Assembly (NCBI GenBank): GCA_965112155.1
Contig: OZ218114.1
Reading direction: 5' to 3' (one strand)
Source of the DNA: Podarcis liolepis
Taxonomy: Eukaryota
Length of the DNA stretch: 64,000 nt
Shown here: one piece after another, positions 9,379-64,000 of the stretch
Position numbering within the stretch: position 1 is the first letter of the stretch
Layout of the letters: each line of letters starts with the position of its first letter
Position numbers and translations under genes: made by a program
Notes under the pieces: model-generated
The model's database searches: none
Told to the model about the DNA's origin: nothing
The model's input: the letters and a program-made list of their open reading frames with translations, nothing else

Positions 9379-11371
9379 GTGTAGAGGCTATTAGGTGTGT
9401 GGCTCCTTTGAATCTGAAGCAGGGTCAGAATTTTAAAGGGATGCATTTATATACATTTTTGGACTTTATTTCTAAATTTATGTTTTTTAATCTGGCCCAT
9501 TCCAAATGGGGCCAGGAACAGTCCACCCCTCATTTCTTCTCACAGTTCCTTTGGAGGGACCCACAGGTGCAGCTGCTGGGAGACTTTCCATGAACTATGA
9601 TTCACAGAAGCCAAGCAGCACAAATGGAGCACAGGGGCATGGCGAGTGGAAAGAGGGTTGTCCCACTGGAGGACTGGGGTCAAATGAATCACATGGCCAG
9701 CCTGTTTTGCTTCCAAGGCATCTCAGTGACTCTGAGTGTTTGCTGTTGCCTGGTGTGTATGTATAGAGCAATTTCCAAGAGCATTGCAAGTTGGGCAAAA
9801 TCTATCAACAAAGTGCCAGTGACCCTTTGCTAAGTGGCAACCTGTTATGGGGAACCATAAAAAGCTGGTCAGGGAAATGGTCCAAAATGTGTGGTGGTGG
9901 TGTTTTAGGCTGCAAATATCTGATATAGGCAACTGCGAGCCAGTGGGCTAGTAATGTTAATGGCAGCAGCAGATAACTTTTCTATCCAGCTGTTCACCAC
10001 AAAACAATGTTAAATAATATTTAGGCTACCTGTACTATTTATGCTCTGGCAGTTGTGCATTGATTTCCCCACCCGTTAGGAATTTTCACCTTTTTGGCTA
10101 CAGTTCTTCATAGTCTGAACCTCCACATGCTTCCCAATTGTTTTCTCCCTCAAACCTGGAAAACCTGGGCAACTACTTTTCAGTCCCCATGGGCCATCTA
10201 CCAGTGAGAGGGTGAGAGGGTAAGAGAAAAGGATGTGGAGGCTGGGAAGAAAACCCCCCAACCCAACCAGACCCCAGGGGATTCTTGCTTGCACACTCCC
10301 TTCTTTTGAGGCCTCTGTTCTTGTCAGCCCCTGTGCCTGGAATACCGGAGTAGGCTCTCTAATGATGACCTCATTATGCGTGCCACTACTGAGCCCAAAA
10401 CGCACTAATTTCCTGACCCGGTGAAATATATTTTAATAAGCTTGATCTAGAGCAGCGTTTAAAGACAAAGGGAAACACTTAACGTGGCTGTCAAAATAAA
10501 GCACTCTTGGGCAGATGTTAAAAATGTTAATAGGATTACTCCATCAGAAGCACCCAGGAGAGCCTGCCCTGTTTGTATACCTCTATTTGGCATTTTAAAG
10601 CACAGGGTTAAACTATTTCTTTGGAGAGAGAAAGAGAGGGGGAAATGGATTAAATTTTGAGGTCGTGCAATTTTTCTTAAATTAGTTTATAGCTTGCTGT
10701 GCTGCCCAGTAATGCCTATATTTGATTCTATGGATTTTTAGTGCTTACCGTGGGATCTTCAATCAAACCCAGTTACCCAGGCAAGTTCATTACACTTAAA
10801 AGTTTTTAAACCACCTCTTCCTCCCCCCCTCCCCCCGAACTTTTTAGTAGAATTCTGTCTCTCTTGATGCAACGATGGTGGACATCTCTGTTGTGCTTTT
10901 AATCATCTCTGTAAAACATTCCTGGCTTTGTGTACTTCTGTTTCAATGGGAAATGGAACAAATACTCACCAGGGCACTAGGAAGATTTGCGTTGACAGCA
11001 TCCTTTTTTGGGTTGTGACCAAAGTGAGACTTGCCACGGGGTGCATCTGTGACATACAGCCGCAGAACGCAACAAGAAGTTCCATCGTGTCACTCATGGT
11101 ATTTAACATTTCATGAAATGGCTGGATGAGATCATCCAGACGTGCAGTGTCTGGAGTGCGGCGTCATCTGTAGATCAGTCATACCCAATTCTAACTCTCC
11201 CTTTCATCTGACCCTGGGAAGACACTGTGAATTCTAAATAGGGGCCTTAAGTCAGCCATGAATTAGATGAGTGTGAGCAAAATTTGAAAAGACACATGTA
11301 TTGTTAGCTGGGAATCTGGCCGATGCTGGAGATATGTACCTTTATTGGAAAGTCTTGTACTTCCCCTAAAG

Positions 11372-17500: not shown

Positions 17501-19099
17501 GAGTCTTGGGATGTGTTGTGCCTCCTTTTGGGTGATGAAATGTCTATGAGGTCTATGAGGAGCAGAGAATCTGAGTCACTGTTAAAAATAATCAAGGCTC
17601 CCGCCCCCGCCCCGCCCCCAGTCTACCTTTGGCTACACTACACGACCCCAAAATGGCATCATGGCAACTAGGAAGCAGAGCTGTTGTATAGGCAAGCTGA
17701 GGGGCTGGTGCTATGACTGGCCAAGGATTTGTTGGAAGGGACAAGGGAAAACTTCCTTTAGCTTCCAGTTGTTCGGTCCAGAAAGTAATCTGTTAAATTG
17801 CTACACATCTTTGCCTTTCAGTAGCAAACATCCAGACAAATTTCCTTCCTCTTCCATTCCTGCTGTTACTGACACCCATCCTATCCCTCTATTGTTCAGC
17901 CTGATGTTGTACACAAATGTCATAAGAAAACATGATCGCTAGATCTGGGGTGTGGCAGCCTCTGGAAGCAGGTATACTTGATAGGTGACCCGCATGCCCA
18001 TCCCAGCTGACATGGCAGCCAGGTGTGGACATACTGAAAATGATTTAGTTTCTGCACTTGCTTGGGTCTAGTCTCTGCAAGCAGTTTCTCTTTTCTTTCT
18101 TGCCCAGCCACTGCAACCTTGATAACCACTTCAGCACCACAATCGAAGAGCATGCCAATTAACCTCTGCATTTAATGAAAATGGGACCTAGCTTTTCTTT
18201 GAGCAAATGTTTTGTGTATGGGGGATGGGCTCTGAGGACAGCTGCATTTATTTACCTGGAATGTTTTTTTTCCTCCAACAGCCCTATTACCATATTTAAA
18301 TGCAAGTATGTCTCTCTTAATTCATATTTTGCAGTAGTTTAGAGACACTTTAGCCTCTCACTTCTATTCAGTTTTTCCCTGTTAGCAATACATGTAGCTA
18401 CGGTGATAGAACTAGAGCTAGCAGGCTTGTAGTTGGCTGAGTTCTTTGGATCTCTTTTTCTCTCTCTTATCTTTTCCTCTGCTTTCCGAATCCTCTTTTT
18501 ATTTTCTTTGCCTCTGGCCTCCATATGGTTGTCTTCATAATGAGGAACTATGAGCAGCGTAATCACTGGCTAAGAGTGCCTCCTGTCTTTTGTCATCACA
18601 ACCAAAATTGGCAATACAAATTAGAGTTCTCCAAAGCTCACATCAAATTAACTCTGAAATTACTTGAGTTCTTTGGGAAAAAATGGAAGGAACTTGGGTG
18701 ATTTTTTCTGAGCCACTCTGAGGGCTCAGAGAAATTATTGGCCTTTCTGTCTTCTCCTTCCTTTAAAGGTCTCCCCACACGCTCCCAGTTTCATGATCTT
18801 CATTTTGAAGTAATGGTAGCAGCAGTGAAAGCAGACCAACATGTTAGCTAACAACCTACCGGCCCATGGGGAACTGTGACAGATGTAGTTCTCTGAAGAG
18901 CCACTGCCCTGATTTAAGATCAAATATGGGTGGGTATATGGATTCTGTAGGGGCAAGGCAACTACATCTCCTATGCTGTCTTCTTACCCAGAAGGCTGCT
19001 CCAACTGGATGGCAGAAGTAATGAGAGAGGGTGAAAACCCTCTCTTCTCTTCGCTCCATGTACTTGCAACTTTTGCCGCTGCTGCCGCTTCTACAACTT

Positions 19100-19882: not shown

Positions 19883-21159
19883 AATAGGCAGGAGAGAAGC
19901 AAGCTCACATTCTGATTAAAGCCAGGGGGGAAATTGAGGGCTTTTAAAAGCTCGCCCCTCATTTGAGCTTGTTTCTGAACCCAAGCTCAGAGGACTGCAG
20001 CAGCATCCCTGGACAAAATTTGACAAAGGGCAGAAAACCCTCCCAGCATCTCCTTGTCCCTGCAGCCCGGGGCATCTTTGATTACCAGCTCCTTATTGCT
20101 TTTGAGAAGCTCCTCCTCCTCAATGGTGGCTGGTCCCTGTCGTGCAGCCCCAACTGCTGTTCTACAGATCCTTGACTTGACTTTCAGCACTTACAGACTC
20201 TTGGCTTGTAGAATTGCCTTCCTCACAACCTTCTGCCCTGCCCTGTCCTGTCTCAGTGGACCTATCTCAGGGTAGCCATATTCAGGAGTCTTCCTCATTC
20301 ACATCTAAGCAGGGCACTGGACCAGCTCTAGGTATGAGAGGAACCCTCAACAATGATGGGCCTTTTGGCCTCCCTCCCACATCAGTGACCTCCCTGTAGC
20401 CTTACCTGGTGGCAGCGACACACAGCAGCAGCACTCTGATGAGTACCAGGCAGTTGTGTCTGGGGGAGCTTCCATTTTTGTTTCCCACAGTGCCCCTTCC
20501 ATAGCCTCCATTCAGAGCATTGTGGAGGGTTAAAAGGATGTCCCTCACTCAGCAGGGTTCCATATATATAGCTGCCAGAGAGTGCTTTGTATTGATGCTG
20601 GACCTGGTGGGGGCTTTGATGTTCATTGCAAAAGAGCGCAGGGCTTGGCAGGAGTTGAAGCTTGCTTCCTCCCCCCCCCCCGGCCACACTCATCCCTTCA
20701 AGCACATTTCTCCTCCAGCCCAAACCACTGGACCTAAGGCTCACCGCCTGCCTTCTGCTTTGACCCGGGAGTTTCATTTTGTGCTGCTTCAATGGAAGAT
20801 CCACTCACATGTTGATTTTGAATTTTTGCACAAAATAGGAAGGAATATAGGCTCTGCTTTGGCAGGACCACTGGCTGCCCATTCACAACTGTGCTGAATT
20901 GCTCTGAATTTCTCCATTATTATGTCCCATGGGCAGCTGCCACTTTTACCTTGCAGGAGAAAGGGAATGGCATCAAAGCGCTTCCCCTCTTAAGACCCAC
21001 CCAAACTCCTCTGCAGTCAATGCTCTCTCATAAATACACACACACAGTTGTTCCCACTCATACTCGCCCTTAACCTGCCTCTTTTGTTGTGGCCGTTGTA
21101 AACACTGGCTGTCCGTTGCACCTTTCCTCTTACCCCTTCTTGTTTTTCCCCACGGCCAG

Positions 21160-21219
21160 GTTTTCCGGCAGCAGCCTACGGACCAGTAGCAGCGGCAGTG
21201 GCAGCAGCAAGAGGATCAG
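21160..21219 (+). CDS. MSI2: MSI2 coding exon (G)FPAAAYGPVAAAVAAARGS
   Basis: Polypyrimidine tract and CAG acceptor at 21157-21159; donor CAG|GTAGGG; phase 1-1; matches the MSI2 C-terminal region, one Ala shorter than the human sequence I recall. Confidence 0.97.
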
Positions 21220-21276
21220 GTAGGGGGGGCCGTGGAAGAGGCGGCTACATGGCATACCTTCAGAATGCAGGGCCAG
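21220..21276 (+). CDS. MSI2: In-frame extension of the exon through an alternative 5' splice site (GRGGRGRGGYMAYLQNAGP)
   Basis: 57 nt open in frame, ending at a second donor CAG|GTAAAA in the same phase (1); RGG-box peptide. Confidence 0.78.
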
Positions 21277-24200
21277 GTAAAAGCTCTGTCGGTATTCTAT
21301 GTGGCTGCAGCTGTCCATCCCTTTCTCTGACTTTTCTCACAGTGATCTGGGGGTGCGGGGATACCCACCAAACAAAACCAAATACTACAAGCAGAGCCCA
21401 TAAGACTCAGAGCAGAGCATAGGCTGTAAGACCAGATGGTCTTTGCGGATCCATCCAGTACAAAGTCCACCCTACTGGGAGCTGTCAACTGGACCTTTTA
21501 TGAAAATGTCAAGGACAACAAAAGTTTTCATTTCTCCACAGTTTGCACTGGGCTAACAACGCAACCACACTCACACCCACATATACACACACCTGTTAAT
21601 TCCTCAACTTGTTAGGGCAGCAACCTGCATCTCCAACTTTAATGTTTGGGATGAATGCAGTGAGTAAGTTACTCTCAGTGGTGGCCCAATCCAAAGAAAG
21701 AAACCACACATCCACTAATATCAGCAAGGATTCCAAATTATGGTGTTTAGGAATGCTCTATCAAACTTTGATCTATGGATCAACCTCCTACAAATCAGCT
21801 TAGCATTCAGCTATTTAGTAAGTTCCGTTTATTCATCTGTCTCTTGAGAAAAGGGACCTATAGTGTGTGTCCCTGCCCTTTGAAATGGTGGCACTCCAGA
21901 TCTGGCCAATGCGAACAGGTCTAGTATCATACAGAATAGGGTGAGCAGTGCAGTTTGCCTTCTCTCGGGCCATTTTTAGGTGCCAAGTCTGGTCAGCTGG
22001 ACCTGGATGCTAGAAAAATAGTTCTCCCCAGTTACTTCGTAGTTCAGACATCTCACTAAAATATGGTTGGGGTGCTTAAGGATGGTTCTGGTGTGATGTT
22101 TGAATTGACAAAACCATAGTTTGCAATTGGCCAACAAACCAGAATCTGATACAATGACAGAAGTTGATTTACAAACTGGATTTTGTGCTAATTCTGGTTT
22201 GGTGTGATATTGATAGCCATTGTTTGACCTCCAGAAGCTGTACCCAAAGGGAGATGAGAGTGATTTGATGGACTTAGGAAGCTGAGTGGCAGAATACAAC
22301 AGCAGACAAGCTGTTCTAAACTATGGTCTGCTAGTATGTTTGGAAGCTCATACCAAGGTTTTGGTTCTAAACTAGGGTTAGCACAAACGGCGACATGGCA
22401 TGATGTCTAAATTGCACCATAGTTTGAAGTCAGTTGCAGTTTTAGGAGTGCAATCTAAATCAGGGGTGTTCCACCTTGGCATAAATTGGAATGGCTCTCT
22501 GAAGAGTATAACCTTTTGCAGACATCTTTAAAAATACTTTTTGCTCTTTGAGCGTGAATATTGTTCCATCTTTTGTTACCTGCTGCAAACTCTGGCTCCA
22601 GTTTCATGAGAAATGTGTGCCCACCTATAAAAAGCTCCACTTCCTTCCACTCTGTTCTCCAGTGCCCCTCCTGCTAGGGGAAGTAGTTAAGCCGCTAGTA
22701 TATCCTAGCATTCCAATTTAGGGGAAAGTGAATTATCCCTTTGGCATAATTGAGTGAAATCATGAGTGGGCTGCTAAGACTTACCAGTGCCTCTCTTTTG
22801 CTGTATTTGCTTGTTGGCTGATACCTTGGTTGTGCCTGAAGCCATTCTGAACCCTAAATACAAAGCAAGGACAAAGGGTAGACTGCTGCTTTCAGTGGGT
22901 TTTATTGCTCCCCAATCTATCTTGCTTGCTCATCTCTGTGTACTGTCTTGTGCGTTTATCCGGCCGTTTGTTCTTGCTAATATTAACTGGGTTATTGCAC
23001 TGGGGGTGGCGGTGGGGGCAATTGGAGACAACACGATTGGGCCCAAATTCCCCAGCCAGATTGTACACGTTGAGACATGTAGCAAACAACTTGGAGGTAA
23101 CTGTTTTATTCAGCTCTCTCATGATGAAGCTTGTTCTTTGACATGAAAATTTCTACACTCATTAGCTATAGGCCTCTTCAAACCGACACAAAACAAAAGG
23201 TCCCAGAGGTGGGGGAAGTGCTGTCAAGCAGCAACACACACAACCGTAATAGACTTTGGCGGGGGTGGGGGGGAGACTGAATTACTTAGGGTCCAAAGTG
23301 GGATGTTTGGAGAACTCCGTTCCATGCAAACTGGCACTGCTTGCGGAGCTACAAAGGATTCATCCATAGCAGTTTATCGTTGTATGTAGGGAAAGTCCAA
23401 GGGTTGGTTTGCTCAAAGATAGCAAAGGGATTTTTTCCCCCCTTTACTTTTTAAAATCCTTTTCTGAAAAGGATTCCATTTATTATTTGAGGAAGAATGG
23501 ACAGATTCCCTCTTCCCTTACCTGCACTTTGGGCCCATTTGGTTCCAGTTTAATTTTAAATAGAGATGATCATTTTTCCCACAGAAAGGACAAGGGTTCT
23601 GCCAGATTAAGTCTGATCTTCACTGTTGTCCTGTTTTAATCAGAGTGTCCCATCACAGCTGAACCTGAGTGTCAGCCAATTTCTCTGCTTGATATCATTT
23701 GGTTGGTTTTTTTTGTTTTTTGTTTTTGTTTTTAATTTTTTTGGATTTTTTTTCTTTTTTAAAGAACAGATTAACTTTGTGATACCAAAAAAGAAAAAAA
23801 AAGAAAATTCTAACCCTGAAATTAACACCAACATATATGGCAAGTTTAAAGAGCAGTATGGTGCCCTGTATATATTTCTTGTCTGTTTTTGAAAAAAAAA
23901 TCTCTTCACTTGCAGATCTACCCTAGTGCTCCCTCAAGGAAACTGTCTGTTGATGTGCAGAAGTGGTTTCCATTGACAAAGAAGCCTTTTCGGCTCAGGG
24001 ACAGCATTCCATTTGCAGCCATTTCCATCAAAGGGAATAGCATTGATAGTGAAGTGTATTTAAGAGCAATGGAGTCAGCTTCATGTTAATGGCACTCAGG
24101 CCTGATTCATTACAGAGGGGGAATGACAAATGGAAGTAATTGGCTTCAATATTTTGATGATTAGAGCAATATCACTCGGGGCACACTTGCAAGATGACTT

Positions 24201-26382: not shown

Positions 26383-26396
26383 ATGAAACGGTTTAA
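26383..26396 (+). CDS. MSI2: Candidate MSI2 alternative last exon, coding part (D)ETV*
   Basis: Acceptor gttttttttgcttgttcag|; phase-1 reading GAT GAA ACG GTT TAA; AATAAA at 26531-26536. Inferred from signals only. Confidence 0.4.
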
Positions 26397-26530
26397 GAAA
26401 CGACTCATATCCAACTCTTGAAAAATGTCTCTCTCTCTCTCTTTCTCTCTCTTTTTAAAAATATATATTTTTGTTTATTTTAGTACACTTTCTCTCTTTT
26501 GGTTTTTTTAAAAATTACTTTCCCTTACTT

Positions 26531-41860: not shown

Positions 41861-42783
41861 GATTCCCCCTGCTTAGCTAGGTTAAATGTGGAGTAGATCA
41901 ACTCTTTGTGATACCTGCCTATTAATTAATTTTTGTTACTTATGCTAGTTCTCAATCTGAAGGTTGTGACGAGGTTTAATGGAAATCAGCTTCTGTTTAC
42001 TTCCTACTGGGACCCAAACCAACTGAAATCCACAAACTGCCTTATTAAAGCCATAACTTTGTATGGTGTGAGACTCACTCATCTTATCTGGGGCTCTGTG
42101 GAGTTCAATTTTTATGGCCAGGGCATTAACACAAACTCCAAACCTTGCACTATGCAGTACTAAAATGGAGGTGGGGGTGGGAGTGATCTTGTAGGATCCA
42201 GTACAACAGGAAATCCAGGTAAGATCAAATAAGGAACATTTCTCAATAAATACATAGATATACTTTGGTACAAATAGTTATGCACACGCACACACACACA
42301 CTTTGTATACATTGCACCTGGTGGTTGGGGATTTTTTTGCTTTTTATGAGTTTGGGGAAAGGGACTTCATGTGGATGAACCCCTGTAGCTTTGCAAGGTT
42401 AGGCCCAGTCAGCTTGGTTCGGCTTTTCTCTACACTTCTCAGTATGTATTGCATTGGTTGTCATTTTAATCAGTTGGGGTTCTGTGTTTGCATACTTCTG
42501 TTCTTGTGCCTGTTTTGGAAAAGAATATATAGTACATCAGATGGTGAGTTTATGTTTTTTTGTTTTTTTACAAAATCCAGGCTCAATGCCTCTGAACCTA
42601 TGAGTCTGAGTAAGGACGCATGATCAAGCTGTGGTCCACTTGCTCCTCAAAATCCTACATACATATATTTTTGCTCTTGTTTCCGTGATTTGTAACTGTA
42701 AAAAAATAATAATAAAGTACAATTTAATATTGAAAATAAGAACCAATCCAGTATCCACAATGATAGAGTCACTGTATCTCCAG

Positions 42784-42960
42784 GGATCCCCGATTACGGT
42801 TTCTATTCTCCGCCCGGTGACCAACGGGCTCAATTATCGTACGCGGACTATGGTTCCATGGGGCCTCGGGTGGCTCAGATGCTTCGTAGCGAGCACCCTG
42901 CTTCAGCGAGTAACTCCCCCCTTCACCACCTTCCCAGCCCGGATCAATTTAAAAGCCCAG
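42784..42960 (+). CDS. MSI2: MSI2 cassette exon, 177 nt, (G)IPDYGFYSPPGDQRAQLSYADYGSMGPRVAQMLRSEHPASASNSPLHHLPSPDQFKSP
   Basis: Acceptor tgtatctccag|, donor CAG|GTTTGT, length divisible by 3, phase 1-1 like its neighbours, no stop in the MSI2 frame, sharp GC/CpG rise confined to the exon, and Y/G/S/P composition like the Musashi C-terminal region. Confidence 0.85.
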
Positions 42961-44660
42961 GTTTGTATAGAATTTCATTCATTTGGGGAAGCAAAAGAAA
43001 AGGAAAATGGCAATAGCATCACATATTTAGCGATGCACAGAAAGAGATCTGCATGCTATGTATGCCACTTAATGGTTGGCAATCAAACTTCACTCCATCC
43101 TTTTACTCAGTTCTAGAATTTTTGTCGACTTTGCTTCAGTTGTGAAGGGCACAGTTTTCTTTTAGGGGCTGTTCCAGATCTGATCAAATGTCAATCAAAA
43201 CCTTTTGTAGAGGCATGACAGCAGAGAGTGAAGTAGCTCATTAGATGTGCAGGGCAACCTTATTCATGTCTACTTGGAAGTAAGTCTTGAGCTTAAAAAG
43301 TGCATTCCCTCTTCAGATGGGTGTGAATCAAAATGTAACTGTATTCTTTAAAGATTATATAAAGGACCCTAATAATTTGTGTTGATTTTTTCAAGATTCT
43401 TCTTAACCCCAGAGATTTTGATGCAAAAGGTTTCAAACTGCATATTCTGTTGAAAGTTATTCTTAGCTAGGTATTTGACCTGAAAGAGATGCTTAGAATA
43501 AGGTGTGTGCGCTTGTGTATGAATGATACTTCATCCTCCTGAGAATCTTTTACTTTGCTTCTTCCAGAAATTTGCTTCTGACATTTGATGAGCTCTTTCA
43601 TTAGCAATCTGATCCTAAATACCTCTTCAGTGCACCTATCTTACGCTGCATAAGCTTCATGTAGTTTATCATTTCAACTGAACTGGGAACTATTGTTAGA
43701 TTTAACTATGGTTTCTCCAAACAATCCAAGATCAAATTGTGTTTTCTGATCCTGACTTGTTTGGATAAAACCATTGTTGAAATTAAATGAAAATCCTGGT
43801 TTGGATGAAACAATAAACAGTGGTTAGTTGAAAATGCTTTTGATTTGTTCTTTGTGGCTATAACAGGAAGAGAGGGGAGAGCAGACCAAGTCAGGCCACT
43901 AAATTACAACTTAGTGTTATGTCCAAACCTGGTCATTGTTTTCTACAAGGATTCCACAAATGTATCCATGACTTAGATTTTTAGCACACTCTTTCTTGAA
44001 ACAGACAGTCTTCTCAGGGCCCCTTCACACCTGTTTGTGAATCATCACCAAATCCAGATTCGCAAATTCTGCATTCCACCTAGAATGAACTCTCGCAATG
44101 AAACCTTGGTTTACATTATGTGTTGAAAGAGTTCCTACTGGTCTTAATGTTTAAATAAGAGGAGGAATGTCTTGCTGTTGCTCATAGGCATGTGGTGGCT
44201 TCTAAATATATACTTACATAGAGTTCACCACTTGAATGAGTCAGCCATCATCTCTCCCCTCCCCACCTTGGAAAATCCTACGTAACTAGATGGCCTAAAT
44301 ACCTGTACATGGGGTTGATTTTTTGACACTCTTGTAAAATTGCTGAAGTGCTTTTGCCTTGAAAATAGGAAGCCATCATTTCCTCCTCACTTTGTGAATC
44401 CACCTCAGTATAATGCGCCATATGCTAAGGCAGATGTCATAATGAATCATGGCTGGAAATTCCTCCCCATTTTATCAAAGAGAGTTTATCTTTCAGTGGT
44501 GACCTTTCTTGTCCAGAACTGGAGTAATTTGTGTGCAGGCTTTGTGTTAACATGCCAGTTCATAGGACAAAGTGCCTGATAAGCCAGCCTTAGCTCTCAC
44601 TTGTCAGCAGTGCCAGCAAAATCATGCTCTGGGCTCTCGCCACACAAGCACTCCTTAAAG

Positions 44661-55251: not shown

Positions 55252-55460
55252 TCTTGAATAGCTACAGTGCTCAACCGAATTTTGGCGCACCCGCTTCCCC
55301 GGCAGGCTCCAACCCAGCCCGGCCCGGAGGATTCCCAGGGGCGAACAGCCCGGGTCCCGTTGCAGACCTCTACGGTACAGCCAGTCAAGACTCCGGTGTT
55401 GGTAACTACATAAGTGCTGCCAGCCCCCAGCCTGGCTCCGGCTTTGGGCATGGAATTGCT
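55252..55460 (+). CDS. MSI2: MSI2 coding exon with two acceptors (55252 long, 55306 short)
   Basis: (V)[17 protein letters not shown]|[52 protein letters not shown]; CAG acceptors at 55249-55251 and 55303-55305 (54 nt apart); donor GCT|GTAAGT. Confidence 0.97.
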
Positions 55461-58014: not shown

Positions 58015-58056
58015 GGGCCTTTGATTGCAACGGCTTTTACAAATGGATACCATTGA
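58015..58056 (+). CDS. MSI2: MSI2 last coding exon GPLIATAFTNGYH* (exon continues as UTR to 58092)
   Basis: ttttag| GGG CCT TTG ATT GCA ACG GCT TTT ACA AAT GGA TAC CAT TGA is the conserved Musashi C-terminus; donor GAG|GTATTC at 58092/58093. Confidence 0.97.
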   Translation, partial: GPLIATAFTNGYH

Positions 58057-63635: not shown

Positions 63636-64000
63636 AGTATATCTGGATGTCCAGGCAAGACAGGGCGAAGTTTCTGAATGGTTCCATGTTTAGGTGATAC
63701 ATCATCAATCAGACTTTGAGCATTGCATCATCACCAATAACCCACACAAACTGGAGGTGGCATTCAGCGGACTTGGGTTGTCCACAATCTCTATCATCTC
63801 ACAAACCTGCTGTACTATATAGAACAACAGCTTTTTAAAGAAAAGAATATGTGTATATATATATAATCCATTTTGTTCATTTTATTATTTTTCTTGATGT
63901 TTTTCCCCCTTTGAAATCTATTTTAATCACTCTTTTGTAGTATTTTGACATAGGCTTGTAGTCACGTAGACCTACTACTTTGTGTATTTAGAAAAAGCCT
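63636..64000 (+). other. MSI2: MSI2 non-coding terminal exon (start of the long 3'UTR; runs off the window)
   Basis: Long pyrimidine tract and TAG acceptor at 63633-63635; agtatatctggatgtccaggcaagacagggcgaagtttctga closely matches the human MSI2 3'UTR start as I recall it. Confidence 0.85.

What the first reader, a model, noticed from the sequence alone, without database searches (positions are those of the whole stretch)
21220..21276. Alternative donor adds a di-RGG box to Musashi-2
Seen: reading through the first donor (GTAGGG) adds 19 codons, GRGGRGRGGYMAYLQNAGP, up to a second same-phase donor CAG|GTAAAA. Known: RGG/RG boxes bind RNA and G-quadruplexes, are PRMT substrates and drive condensation with Tyr-rich regions; canonical MSI2 has two RRMs and no such box at this position. 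Inference: a splice-switchable third RNA-binding/methylation module. It may be co-included with the Tyr-rich 177-nt exon, giving a 78-aa Arg+Tyr insert. The G-run that encodes the RGG could itself be an hnRNP H/F site controlling donor choice.
Basis: partly seen in the sequence, partly recalled or inferred. Interest (0 to 1): 0.8.

Follow-up and report, generated by a model that had tools for sequence, protein, structure and literature searches.

The report
Known alternative splice extension of Musashi-2
The 57 bases are a real, very old alternative splice-site extension of the lizard Musashi-2 gene that adds a 19-residue Arg/Gly/Tyr stretch; public gene models already carry it, so it is ordinary, though its RNA is unusually conserved.

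Summary
Exon 21160-21219 of a wall-lizard (Podarcis) MSI2 gene has a second, same-phase donor at 21276|21277. Using it adds 19 stop-free codons, GRGGRGRGGYMAYLQNAGP.

It is neither chance nor new. The identical peptide is in RefSeq-predicted Podarcis muralis MSI2 isoforms. A 19-residue counterpart is in MSI2 models of other lizards, turtles, crocodilians, marsupials, platypus, lungfish, bichir, many teleosts, sharks and a chimaera. Cloned Xenopus Msi-2 is 406 aa, which equals 328 + 78 (19 + the 59-codon exon at 42784-42960).

All four combinations of the extension and that exon are annotated, so co-inclusion is common but not obligatory.

The "di-RGG" is lineage-specific. The ancestral form is RGxRGRGG; marsupials and platypus keep one RGG. 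The constant core is GRGGYxAYPQ. RNA binding, methylation and condensation remain untested.

My reads were too sparse (5 RNA reads, none entering the extension) to show use in this lizard.

One extra point: against a teleost copy, the extension is frozen at synonymous sites (14 of 15 codons) and 30 of the next 36 intron bases match. A predicted hairpin puts the distal donor in its loop. This suggests an RNA-level switch but rests on two species.

The parts
21160..21219 (+). Constitutive part of the MSI2 exon, encoding (G)FPAAAYGPVAAAVAAARGS(G).
   Evidence: RNA reads and contigs cover it, and the junction to the upstream exon (...TATCAGTTC|CCAG G) was seen. It matches P. muralis MSI2 isoforms X2/X5 (P0183, P0182) at 100%.
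21217..21225 (+). Proximal (major) donor, CAG|GTAGGG, phase 1.
   Evidence: In run X10 the exon contig ends exactly at 21219, and RNA reads leave the stretch there.
21220..21276 (+). 57-nt alternative exon extension. It adds 19 codons; the resulting protein reads G-RGGRGRGGYMAYLQNAGP-G.
   Evidence: The identical peptide is in Podarcis, Lacerta and Zootoca models. A 19-residue ortholog runs from sharks to marsupials. 49 of 57 nt are identical to a teleost.
21223..21229 (+). Run of seven G at +4 to +10 of the proximal donor. It encodes part of R-G-G.
   Evidence: A teleost has six G at the same place. Binding by hnRNP H/F is only inferred.
21274..21282 (+). Distal donor, CAG|GTAAAA, phase 1.
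   Evidence: The teleost has CAG|GTAAAC. Read-through ORFs of other species nearly all translate G-K after the extension, that is GGT AAR.
21277..21312 (+). Deeply conserved intron flank downstream of the distal donor.
   Evidence: 30 of 36 nt are identical between lizard and teleost, and similarity then decays. The intron upstream of the exon is not alignable. Its in-frame translation, K[RS]SV[GH][IV]LCG, recurs in ORF calls from many species.
21241..21308 (+). Predicted RNA hairpin. Outer stem 21241-21248 / 21301-21308. Apical stem 21267-21273 / 21283-21289. The 9-nt loop is the distal donor.
   Evidence: -48 kcal/mol, z -2.53. One search gives the pair map. (two-species RNAalifold): 32 pairs, 1 compensatory, 6 one-sided, none broken. 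The fish sequence alone gives z -0.26. This is a prediction only.
42784..42960 (+). 177-nt alternative exon (IPDYGFY...DQFKSP), phase 1-1. It is the usual partner of the extension.
   Evidence: Annotated after the extension in many species.
55252..55460 (+). Next exon. It has two acceptors, 55252 (adds [18 protein letters not shown]) and 55306. The distal donor is also joined to it in some models.
   Evidence: Lacerta X12, Rhineura X10, Sceloporus X9, Anolis, Pogona and Gavialis/Alligator models join the extension directly to VLNSY.

Best explanation
The 57 bases are the alternative part of an MSI2 exon that has two competing 5' splice sites in the same phase.

The proximal site (21219|21220) gives the canonical junction. 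The distal site (21276|21277) inserts 19 residues into the disordered C-terminal half of Musashi-2. The insert sits just after the Ala-rich tract and before the optional Tyr-rich exon.

The arrangement dates at least to the common ancestor of jawed vertebrates and is already present in public gene models, including those of this lizard genus.

The insert is an RG/RGG-plus-tyrosine element with conserved core G-R-G-x-x-G-R-G-G-Y-x-A-Y-P-Q-N-x-G. It resembles the RGG boxes that follow the two RRMs of hnRNP A/B-type proteins. I infer that it adds non-specific RNA affinity and Arg-Tyr contacts, and possibly arginine-methylation sites, to the tail. This would tune the protein's interactions, alone or together with the Tyr-rich exon.

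Donor choice is probably set at RNA level. The extension is frozen at synonymous sites. A G-run sits on the proximal donor. The next 36 intron bases are conserved and can pair with the extension, leaving the distal donor in a hairpin loop.

Shown: the anatomy, the conservation, the annotation, predicted disorder and RNA-level conservation in two species.

Inferred: the insert's biochemical role, the regulators of donor choice, and use of the distal donor in this particular lizard.
For: - Anatomy and donor strength.
- tblastn of P. muralis isoforms X5/X2 (P0182, P0183) maps every exon of the window, including the extension, at 100% identity.
- The 38-residue query found 23 representatives over its full length.
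- Named full-length models carry the extension in lizards, lungfish, bichir, more than 100 teleost entries, sharks, rays and a chimaera. It is also in turtles, crocodilians, marsupials and platypus.
- The length is 19 residues in 125 of the 132 sequences that the pattern matched.
- In 21 taxa, 7 of 19 columns are invariant and 4 more nearly so.
- Mean identity to Podarcis is 0.80, about the same as the neighbouring alternative exon at 0.79.
- Transcript-level support elsewhere: Xenopus Msi-2 (xrp-1) cDNA is 406 aa, and its phosphosites are shifted by 78 relative to mammals (PMC5835034; PMC5599597). A 2.4-kb Logan contig encodes a full 407-aa teleost protein that scores like the other teleost proteins over the extension region (P0077); I did not read its sequence individually.
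- Disorder: AlphaFold2 pLDDT is about 25-29 across residues 284-302 and below 50 across almost all of residues 187-426.
- RNA-level constraint, lizard versus teleost (L001): 14 of 15 same-residue codons are identical in the extension, against 5-7 of 18 in the constitutive part of the exon (Fisher p 0.0002-0.003). 30 of 36 intron bases are identical.
- Hairpin prediction.
Against: - Use in this species was not shown. Three bulk RNA runs gave only 5 reads on the exon, and none entered the extension.
- In run X10 (a close relative) the only contig covering the extension runs on through the distal donor into the intron, at about a sixth of exon depth. That looks like unspliced RNA and shows no branch at 21276.
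- Gene models are predictions and may combine exons freely.
- The number of RG/RGG units is not conserved. The middle Arg is lost in turtles and crocodilians. Marsupials and platypus keep one RGG. One gecko has GRGACGKGG. This weakens a multi-RGG mechanism.
- The first Arg may be held by the proximal donor (GT-AGG) rather than by protein function.
- The hairpin rests on two sequences with one compensatory pair, and the teleost sequence alone folds no better than shuffles.
- I found no paper that tests the insert's function.
Confidence: 0.85

Rival explanations
1. The in-frame read-through is a coincidence. The distal GT is not used, and the 57 bases are plain intron.
For: No RNA read or contig in my single read-laying run uses the distal donor. 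About 1% of mock donors show such an arrangement by chance.
Against: The 19-residue length and sequence are kept from sharks to marsupials, and the extension is spliced to downstream exons in hundreds of models. Xenopus cDNA is 406 aa. A full-length transcript contig exists in a teleost (P0077).
Confidence: 0.03
2. The block is conserved mainly as an RNA element: a splicing enhancer or silencer with a structure that governs the proximal donor or downstream exon choice. The peptide is then a tolerated minor by-product with little function of its own.
For: Synonymous sites are frozen (14 of 15 codons), and conservation runs 36 nt past the distal donor into the intron. The G-run is kept at nucleotide level. 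A hairpin is predicted. The proximal donor dominates in the reads I saw.
Against: An RNA element alone would not need an open frame of fixed length in every lineage. Where the protein does change (A/G, M/L/T, P/L, N/S), the changes are conservative. The long form is the cloned, functional Xenopus protein.
Confidence: 0.15
3. The insert works through its constant core GRGGYxAYPQ as a short linear motif, for example an import-receptor or partner-binding site or a Tyr-modification site. It is then not a multi-RGG RNA-binding or methylation box.
For: The invariant or near-invariant residues are G6, R7, G8, Y10, A12, Y13 and Q15, whereas R5 and the RG count vary. A neighbouring 18-residue splice insert of human MSI2 acts as a localisation signal (PMC13228403).
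Against: No known motif was matched here, and Pfam finds only the RRMs. The tri-RG pattern is kept in all the sharks, lungfish, bichir and most teleost msi2b models inspected.
Confidence: 0.3

Closest known systems
RefSeq-predicted MSI2 isoforms of Podarcis muralis (X1, X2, X3, X5; e.g. XP_028563837.1), Lacerta agilis and Zootoca vivipara
   Same: They carry an identical 19-residue insert at the identical exon junction. All exons of the window map at 100% to P0182 and P0183.
   Different: Nothing structural. They are computed models, and I could not see their RNA support.
Xenopus Msi-2 / xrp-1 (Good et al. 1993), 406 aa
   Same: It is 78 residues longer than the mammalian 328-aa MSI2, and its phosphosites are shifted by 78. 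That equals 19 + 59, so it should hold the extension plus the Tyr-rich exon. It is functional in oocyte maturation assays (PMC5599597, PMC5835034).
   Different: I did not see its sequence, so the 19 + 59 assignment is arithmetic inference.
RGG boxes of hnRNP A/B-type 2xRRM proteins (hnRNP A1/A2; from general knowledge)
   Same: An Arg-Gly repeat with flanking Tyr, lying in a disordered tail just after two RRMs.
   Different: It is much shorter (three RG units here), splice-optional, and its RG count is not conserved among orthologs. Methylation and RNA binding are untested.
hnRNPDL isoforms (PMC6996132, title and abstract seen)
   Same: Alternative splicing includes or omits disordered domains of a 2xRRM protein and thereby controls its phase separation. 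That the two domains are an Arg-rich and a Tyr-rich one is from my memory, not from what I read.
   Different: hnRNPDL uses whole cassette exons rather than a 5' splice-site extension, and it is a different gene. The analogy is functional only.
18-residue alternative 3' acceptor insert of human MSI2-324 (PMC13228403)
   Same: It is a small in-frame splice insert in the same tail of the same gene. It is present in this window at 55252-55305. In human cells it redirects the protein to the nucleus and changes translation output.
   Different: It is a different insert, made by an alternative acceptor. It has been functionally tested, whereas the 19-residue insert has not.
Stem-loops at regulated 5' splice sites (e.g. 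MAPT exon 10; from general knowledge)
   Same: The predicted local RNA structure includes the alternative donor.
   Different: Here the donor lies in the loop rather than the stem. The support is two species and one compensatory pair.

Membership tests
MSI2 (Musashi homolog 2) gene | Exons encode the MSI2 C-terminal region in order and in frame. | tested here: met
   tblastn of P0182 and P0183 against the window gives blocks of 98.4-100% identity at 18281-18307, 42780-42965, 55245/55305-55460, 58015-58053 and 63636-63674. At 21162-21293 the reported block is 90.9% only because it runs past the distal donor; 21162-21275 is identical. Pfam finds two RRMs in P0182.
Conserved alternative 5' splice site (exon extension) | A second GT donor in the same phase, with an open frame between the two donors. 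| tested here: met
Conserved alternative 5' splice site (exon extension) | The extension keeps its length and sequence in orthologs. | tested here: met
   It is 19 residues in 125 of 132 pattern-matched sequences. 7 columns are invariant across 21 taxa.
Conserved alternative 5' splice site (exon extension) | Both junctions are observed in RNA of this organism. | tested here: inconclusive
   Only 5 RNA reads were laid. All are consistent with the proximal donor and none uses the distal donor. The X10 contig reads through.
Conserved alternative 5' splice site (exon extension) | Flanking intron conservation, typical of regulated events. | tested here: met
   30 of 36 nt after the distal donor are identical to a teleost, and the upstream intron is unalignable.
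Di-RGG / tri-RG motif (RGG-X0-4-RGG; RG-X0-4-RG-X0-4-RG; definitions from memory of Thandapani et al. 2013) | The motif pattern is present in the peptide. | tested here: met
   The window encodes RGG-RG-RGG.
Di-RGG / tri-RG motif | The pattern is conserved among orthologs. | tested here: not met
   The di-RGG is found only in lacertids and Sceloporus. The ancestral form is RGxRGRGG (tri-RG with one RGG). Turtles and crocodilians have RG plus RGG. Marsupials and platypus have one RGG.
Di-RGG / tri-RG motif | The motif lies in a disordered region. | tested here: met
   pLDDT is about 25-29 over residues 284-302 of P0182.
Di-RGG / tri-RG motif | It binds RNA or G-quadruplexes and is methylated by PRMTs. 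| not testable with these tools
   No paper in the held library addresses this insert.
hnRNP H/F-responsive G-run at a 5' splice site | A run of three or more G just downstream of the donor. | tested here: met
   G7 lies at 21223-21229 and GGG at 21270-21272. A teleost has G6 at the same place.
hnRNP H/F-responsive G-run at a 5' splice site | The protein binds the run and shifts donor choice. | not testable with these tools
   This needs CLIP data or a minigene.
Conserved RNA hairpin at the distal donor | Stability beyond shuffled controls, and covariation. | tested here: inconclusive
   Lizard z is -2.53 and teleost z is -0.26. There is one compensatory pair and no broken pair, but only two sequences.

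The most novel reading that the evidence does not exclude
The extension plus the next 36 intron bases form a block of about 95 nt with two functions, frozen at synonymous sites since before fish and tetrapods split. It encodes the RG-Tyr insert. As RNA, it would act as the switch that sets how often the insert is made. The switch would consist of a G-run on the proximal donor and a hairpin that holds the distal donor in a 9-nt loop, perhaps read by hnRNP H/F or by Musashi itself. Squamates have strengthened the box to a di-RGG, and mammals have let it decay.
Probability: 0.3. Interest if true: 0.5.

Novelty: already known. Interest (0 to 1): 0.2.

Why it matters
For the scan, this is an ordinary annotated feature. 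Gene models of the same genus, and of vertebrates from sharks to marsupials, already contain the 19-residue insert.

The residual value is modest but real:
- MSI2 is a heavily studied stem-cell and cancer RNA-binding protein.
- A neighbouring 18-residue splice insert was recently shown to switch its localisation and activity (PMC13228403).
- In the held library I found no functional study of the 19-residue RG-Tyr insert or of the 78-residue long form. That long form is the standard frog and fish protein.
- The frozen synonymous sites and the conserved intron flank indicate that donor choice is under old, strong control, which could be tested in a minigene.

Tried and rejected
- **Reads.** Three bulk RNA runs of the species gave 0, 2 and 3 reads on the exon, too few to measure donor use. 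X10 contigs show the upstream splice junction and a read-through contig only.
- **Word search from the window.** The open frame around the exon is only 106 aa. The length rule therefore excludes full-length MSI2, so I used the single full-library search with the 38-aa exon plus extension by reference.
- **Spliced model.** Exons were searched or compared singly by reference, and database proteins were laid on the window with tblastn.
- **The look-up of encoding contigs.** One metagenome pattern scan gave a single teleost contig.
- **Papers not held.** PMC3901373 (zebrafish msi2b splice variants) and PMC309235, my guess at a truncated id for the 1993 xrp-1 paper, could not be read.
- **Literature.** Searches for RGG or methylation of MSI2 found nothing on this insert.
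- **Upstream exon.** It is not in the window.
- **Placental mammals, birds, snakes and amphibian sequences.** None was among the proteins shown to me. I did not look up human sequence, so their status is open. Absence from the listed hits is not evidence of loss.
- **Obligatory coupling with the 177-nt exon.** Rejected, because all four combinations are annotated.

Full report
**What is there**

The window holds the 3' half of a Musashi-2 (MSI2) gene on the + strand. The exon at 21160-21219 encodes (G)FPAAAYGPVAAAVAAARGS(G) and ends at CAG|GTAGGG. Reading on in frame gives RGGRGRGGYMAYLQNAGP with no stop, up to a second donor, CAG|GTAAAA, at 21276|21277.

Both donors split a Gly codon after its first base, so either can join the same downstream exons. 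With a simple donor matrix (frequencies from memory), the two sites score in the top 0.6% and 2.2% of all GT sites in the window. The distal site scores above the accepted donor of exon 42784-42960. About 1% of mock strong donors in the window have such an in-phase, open, second strong donor by chance.

**Identity of the locus**

The exon plus extension was searched by reference (window:21162-21275). Database proteins were then laid back on the window.

tblastn of two Podarcis muralis MSI2 isoforms (X5 = P0182, X2 = P0183) matches at 98.4-100% identity, and over 21162-21275 exactly (the reported block there is 90.9% because it runs past the distal donor). Splice boundaries come:

| Element | Coordinates | Encodes or role |
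|---|---|---|
| Micro-exon | 10742-10780 | VLTVGSSIKPSYP |
| Micro-exon | 18282-18305 | ALLPYLNA |
| Exon plus extension | 21160-21276 | FPAAAY... plus the 19-residue insert |
| Tyr-rich exon | 42784-42960 | IPDYGFY...DQFKSP |
| Next exon | 55252 or 55306 to 55460 | two acceptors |
| Last exon, option 1 | 58015-58056 | GPLIATAFTNGYH* |
| Last exon, option 2 | 63636-63677 | SISGCPGKTGRSF* |

The window is therefore a wall lizard (Podarcis), and its 19-residue insert is already in the RefSeq models of that genus.

**Is it used, and how old is it**

The 38-residue query hit 23 cluster representatives over its whole length, at 78-97% identity and E-values from 4e-10 to 1e-4. Many of these are ORF calls on genomic contigs that read through the distal donor. 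Several are spliced.

Three word searches seeded with full-length hits, and two cluster look-ups, show the insert in named MSI2 models of:
- lizards (Podarcis, Lacerta, Zootoca, Anolis, Pogona, Sceloporus, Rhineura, two geckos);
- turtles and crocodilians;
- marsupials and platypus;
- lungfish, bichir and more than 100 teleost msi2a/msi2b entries;
- sharks, rays and a chimaera.

Its length is 19 residues in 125 of the 132 sequences that the pattern matched. Across 21 taxa, positions 1, 2, 6, 10, 12 and 15 among others are invariant, and 7, 8, 13 and 18 nearly so. Mean identity to Podarcis is 0.80. That compares with 0.79 for the neighbouring alternative exon and 0.92-0.98 for constitutive parts.

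Transcript-level support comes from elsewhere:
- Cloned Xenopus Msi-2 (xrp-1) is 406 aa (PMC5835034).
- Its two regulatory serines are numbered 78 higher than in the 328-aa mammalian protein (PMC5599597). 78 equals 19 + 59. I did not see the frog sequence, so this assignment is inference.
- A 2.4-kb Logan contig encodes a complete 407-aa teleost protein that scores like the other teleost proteins over the extension region (P0077). I did not read its sequence individually.

In this lizard my one read-laying run was underpowered:
- Only 5 RNA reads lay on the exon, and none entered the extension.
- In run X10, from a close relative, the exon contig stops at 21219.
- The only contig over the extension runs on into the intron, at about a sixth of the exon's depth, with no break at 21276.
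- The proximal donor is therefore clearly the major one in those samples. Use of the distal donor in Podarcis rests on the gene models and on conservation.

**Coupling with the 177-nt exon**

All four combinations are annotated:
- both present (many species);
- extension without the exon (Lacerta X12, Rhineura, Sceloporus, Anolis, Pogona, Gavialis/Alligator, Chrysemys, marsupials, platypus);
- the exon without the extension (cyprinid msi2a, turtles, a gecko, lungfish X5);
- neither.

One teleost model joins the extension to an alternative terminal exon (P0009). Co-inclusion is common but not obligatory. Every alternative module I checked in the tail (the two micro-exons, the extension, the 177-nt exon and the 54-nt acceptor extension) keeps the reading frame, so they can be combined freely. 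Four of them, and the constitutive exon, end on CAG with a split codon after its first base; micro-exon 18282-18305 ends on GCAA.

**What the insert is**

AlphaFold2 on a 21-sequence alignment models the two RRMs with moderate to good confidence (block means mostly pLDDT 70-86). It leaves almost all of residues 187-426 below pLDDT 50, and the insert scores about 25-29. Pfam sees only the RRMs. The insert is therefore a piece of a disordered tail.

The RG and RGG content varies by lineage:

| Lineage | Sequence at the Arg-Gly positions | RG/RGG content |
|---|---|---|
| Lacertids, Sceloporus | RGGRGRGG | di-RGG |
| Anolis, Pogona, Rhineura | RGGRGRGS | one RGG plus two RG |
| Sharks, chimaera, bichir, lungfish, one gecko, most teleost msi2b (ancestral) | RG[AT]RGRGG | three RG units, one RGG |
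| Turtles | RGAGGRGG (typical form) | middle Arg lost |
| Crocodilians | RGACGRGG | middle Arg lost |
| Marsupials, platypus | REVYGRGG | one RGG |

The constant part is GRGGYxAYPQ. The first Arg (AGG) overlaps the proximal donor, GT-AGG. The last codon is NCA or similar, which keeps CAG|GT at the distal donor.

My reading is that the insert is an RG/RGG-plus-Tyr element like the RGG boxes that follow the RRMs of hnRNP A/B-type proteins. It would add RNA affinity and Arg-Tyr contacts, and possibly methylation sites. This is inference. A linear-motif role for the constant core is a serious rival.

The closest tested analogies are:
- hnRNPDL, where alternative splicing of disordered domains controls phase separation (PMC6996132, title and abstract only);
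- the 18-residue acceptor insert of human MSI2-324, which redirects the protein to the nucleus (PMC13228403). That insert is also present here, at 55252-55305.

**An RNA-level layer**

One metagenome contig (L001, MDSQ01247453.1) carries the teleost msi2b version of this exon. I take it for fish DNA, because its peptide equals that of 49 teleost proteins. Comparing lizard with teleost:
- 49 of 57 bases of the extension are identical.
- 14 of 15 codons for the same residue are the identical codon. In the constitutive part of the same exon the figure is 5-7 of 18 (Fisher p 0.0002-0.003).
- 30 of the first 36 intron bases after the distal donor are identical. Similarity then decays.
- The upstream intron is unalignable.
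- The G-run on the proximal donor is kept (G7 against G6).

The lizard RNA 21205-21325 folds to -48 kcal/mol, with z -2.53. In that hairpin the extension (21241-21258, 21267-21273) pairs with the conserved flank (21283-21308). The 9-nt loop is exactly the distal donor, CAGGUAAAA.

A two-species consensus fold keeps this architecture: 32 pairs, one compensatory change (U-A to C-G), six one-sided changes and none broken. However, the teleost sequence alone is no more stable than shuffles, with z -0.26. Two sequences cannot establish a structure. I report it as a lead.

**Verdict**

There is a real splice-switchable insert, often paired with the Tyr-rich exon. The di-RGG is not the conserved feature, and its biochemistry is untested.
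- Novelty: already known, because it is annotated in this genus and across jawed vertebrates.
My protein hits agree for lizards, turtles and fishes. I did not see snakes or amphibian sequences.
- No human sequence was looked up, and the state of the insert in placental mammals is left open.

Noticed in passing
window 10742-10780: A 39-nt alternative micro-exon (VLTVGSSIKPSYP) of MSI2. Its donor appears to be a GC donor (CCAG|GCAAGT). It is present in Podarcis, Lacerta, Zootoca and Euleptes models.
   Followed up: partly
window 18282-18305: A 24-nt alternative micro-exon (ALLPYLNA). When it is included, the junction codon with exon 21160 reads Ser instead of Gly.
   Followed up: partly
window 10742-55460: Every alternative module checked in the MSI2 tail (two micro-exons, the 57-nt extension, the 177-nt exon and the 54-nt acceptor extension) keeps the reading frame, so they combine freely. 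Four of them, and the constitutive exon, end on CAG with a split codon after its first base; micro-exon 18282-18305 ends on GCAA. This explains the many X-numbered isoforms.
   Followed up: partly
window 26383-26397: A tiny alternative terminal exon that reads DETV* after a phase-1 junction, with an AATAAA-like signal about 150 nt downstream. Another note of the scan (s1-844374) covers it. Alligator and marsupial models instead carry a different alternative end (E[YH][IT]WMSRQD...).
   Followed up: partly
window 55252-55305: The alternative 3' acceptor adds [18 protein letters not shown]. This corresponds to the 18-residue alternative-acceptor insert of human MSI2-324 that drives nuclear localisation (PMC13228403); I matched it by position and from memory of the human and mouse sequence, not by a sequence comparison here.
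   Followed up: partly
window 58015-58056 and 63636-63677: Two alternative last coding exons, GPLIATAFTNGYH* and SISGCPGKTGRSF*. These fit the alternatively spliced residues 394-406 (two 13-residue endings) described for Xenopus Msi-2 (PMC5835034); I did not see the frog residues.
   Followed up: partly
window 21277-21312 and L001 475-440 (minus strand): The intron flank after the distal donor is 83% identical between a lizard and a teleost. Its in-frame pseudo-translation, K[RS]SV[GH][IV]LCG, recurs in ORF calls from many species.
   Followed up: yes
run X10 (organism B), window 21156-21189: A run labelled only 'RNA? (a guess)' holds a contig that joins the upstream exon to 21160, so it does contain spliced RNA. 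Its read-through contig has no difference from the window over 21191-21372 but 8 listed differences (10 counted for that contig) beyond that.
   Followed up: partly
proteins P0023, P0018, P0180 (fish): In a few fish copies the residue after the insert reads D-K instead of G-K. This would change the distal GT to AT. In P0023 the RG units are also decayed (GRGAHGGAGHMAYSQTAGA). This may be loss of the distal donor in some paralogs.
   Followed up: no
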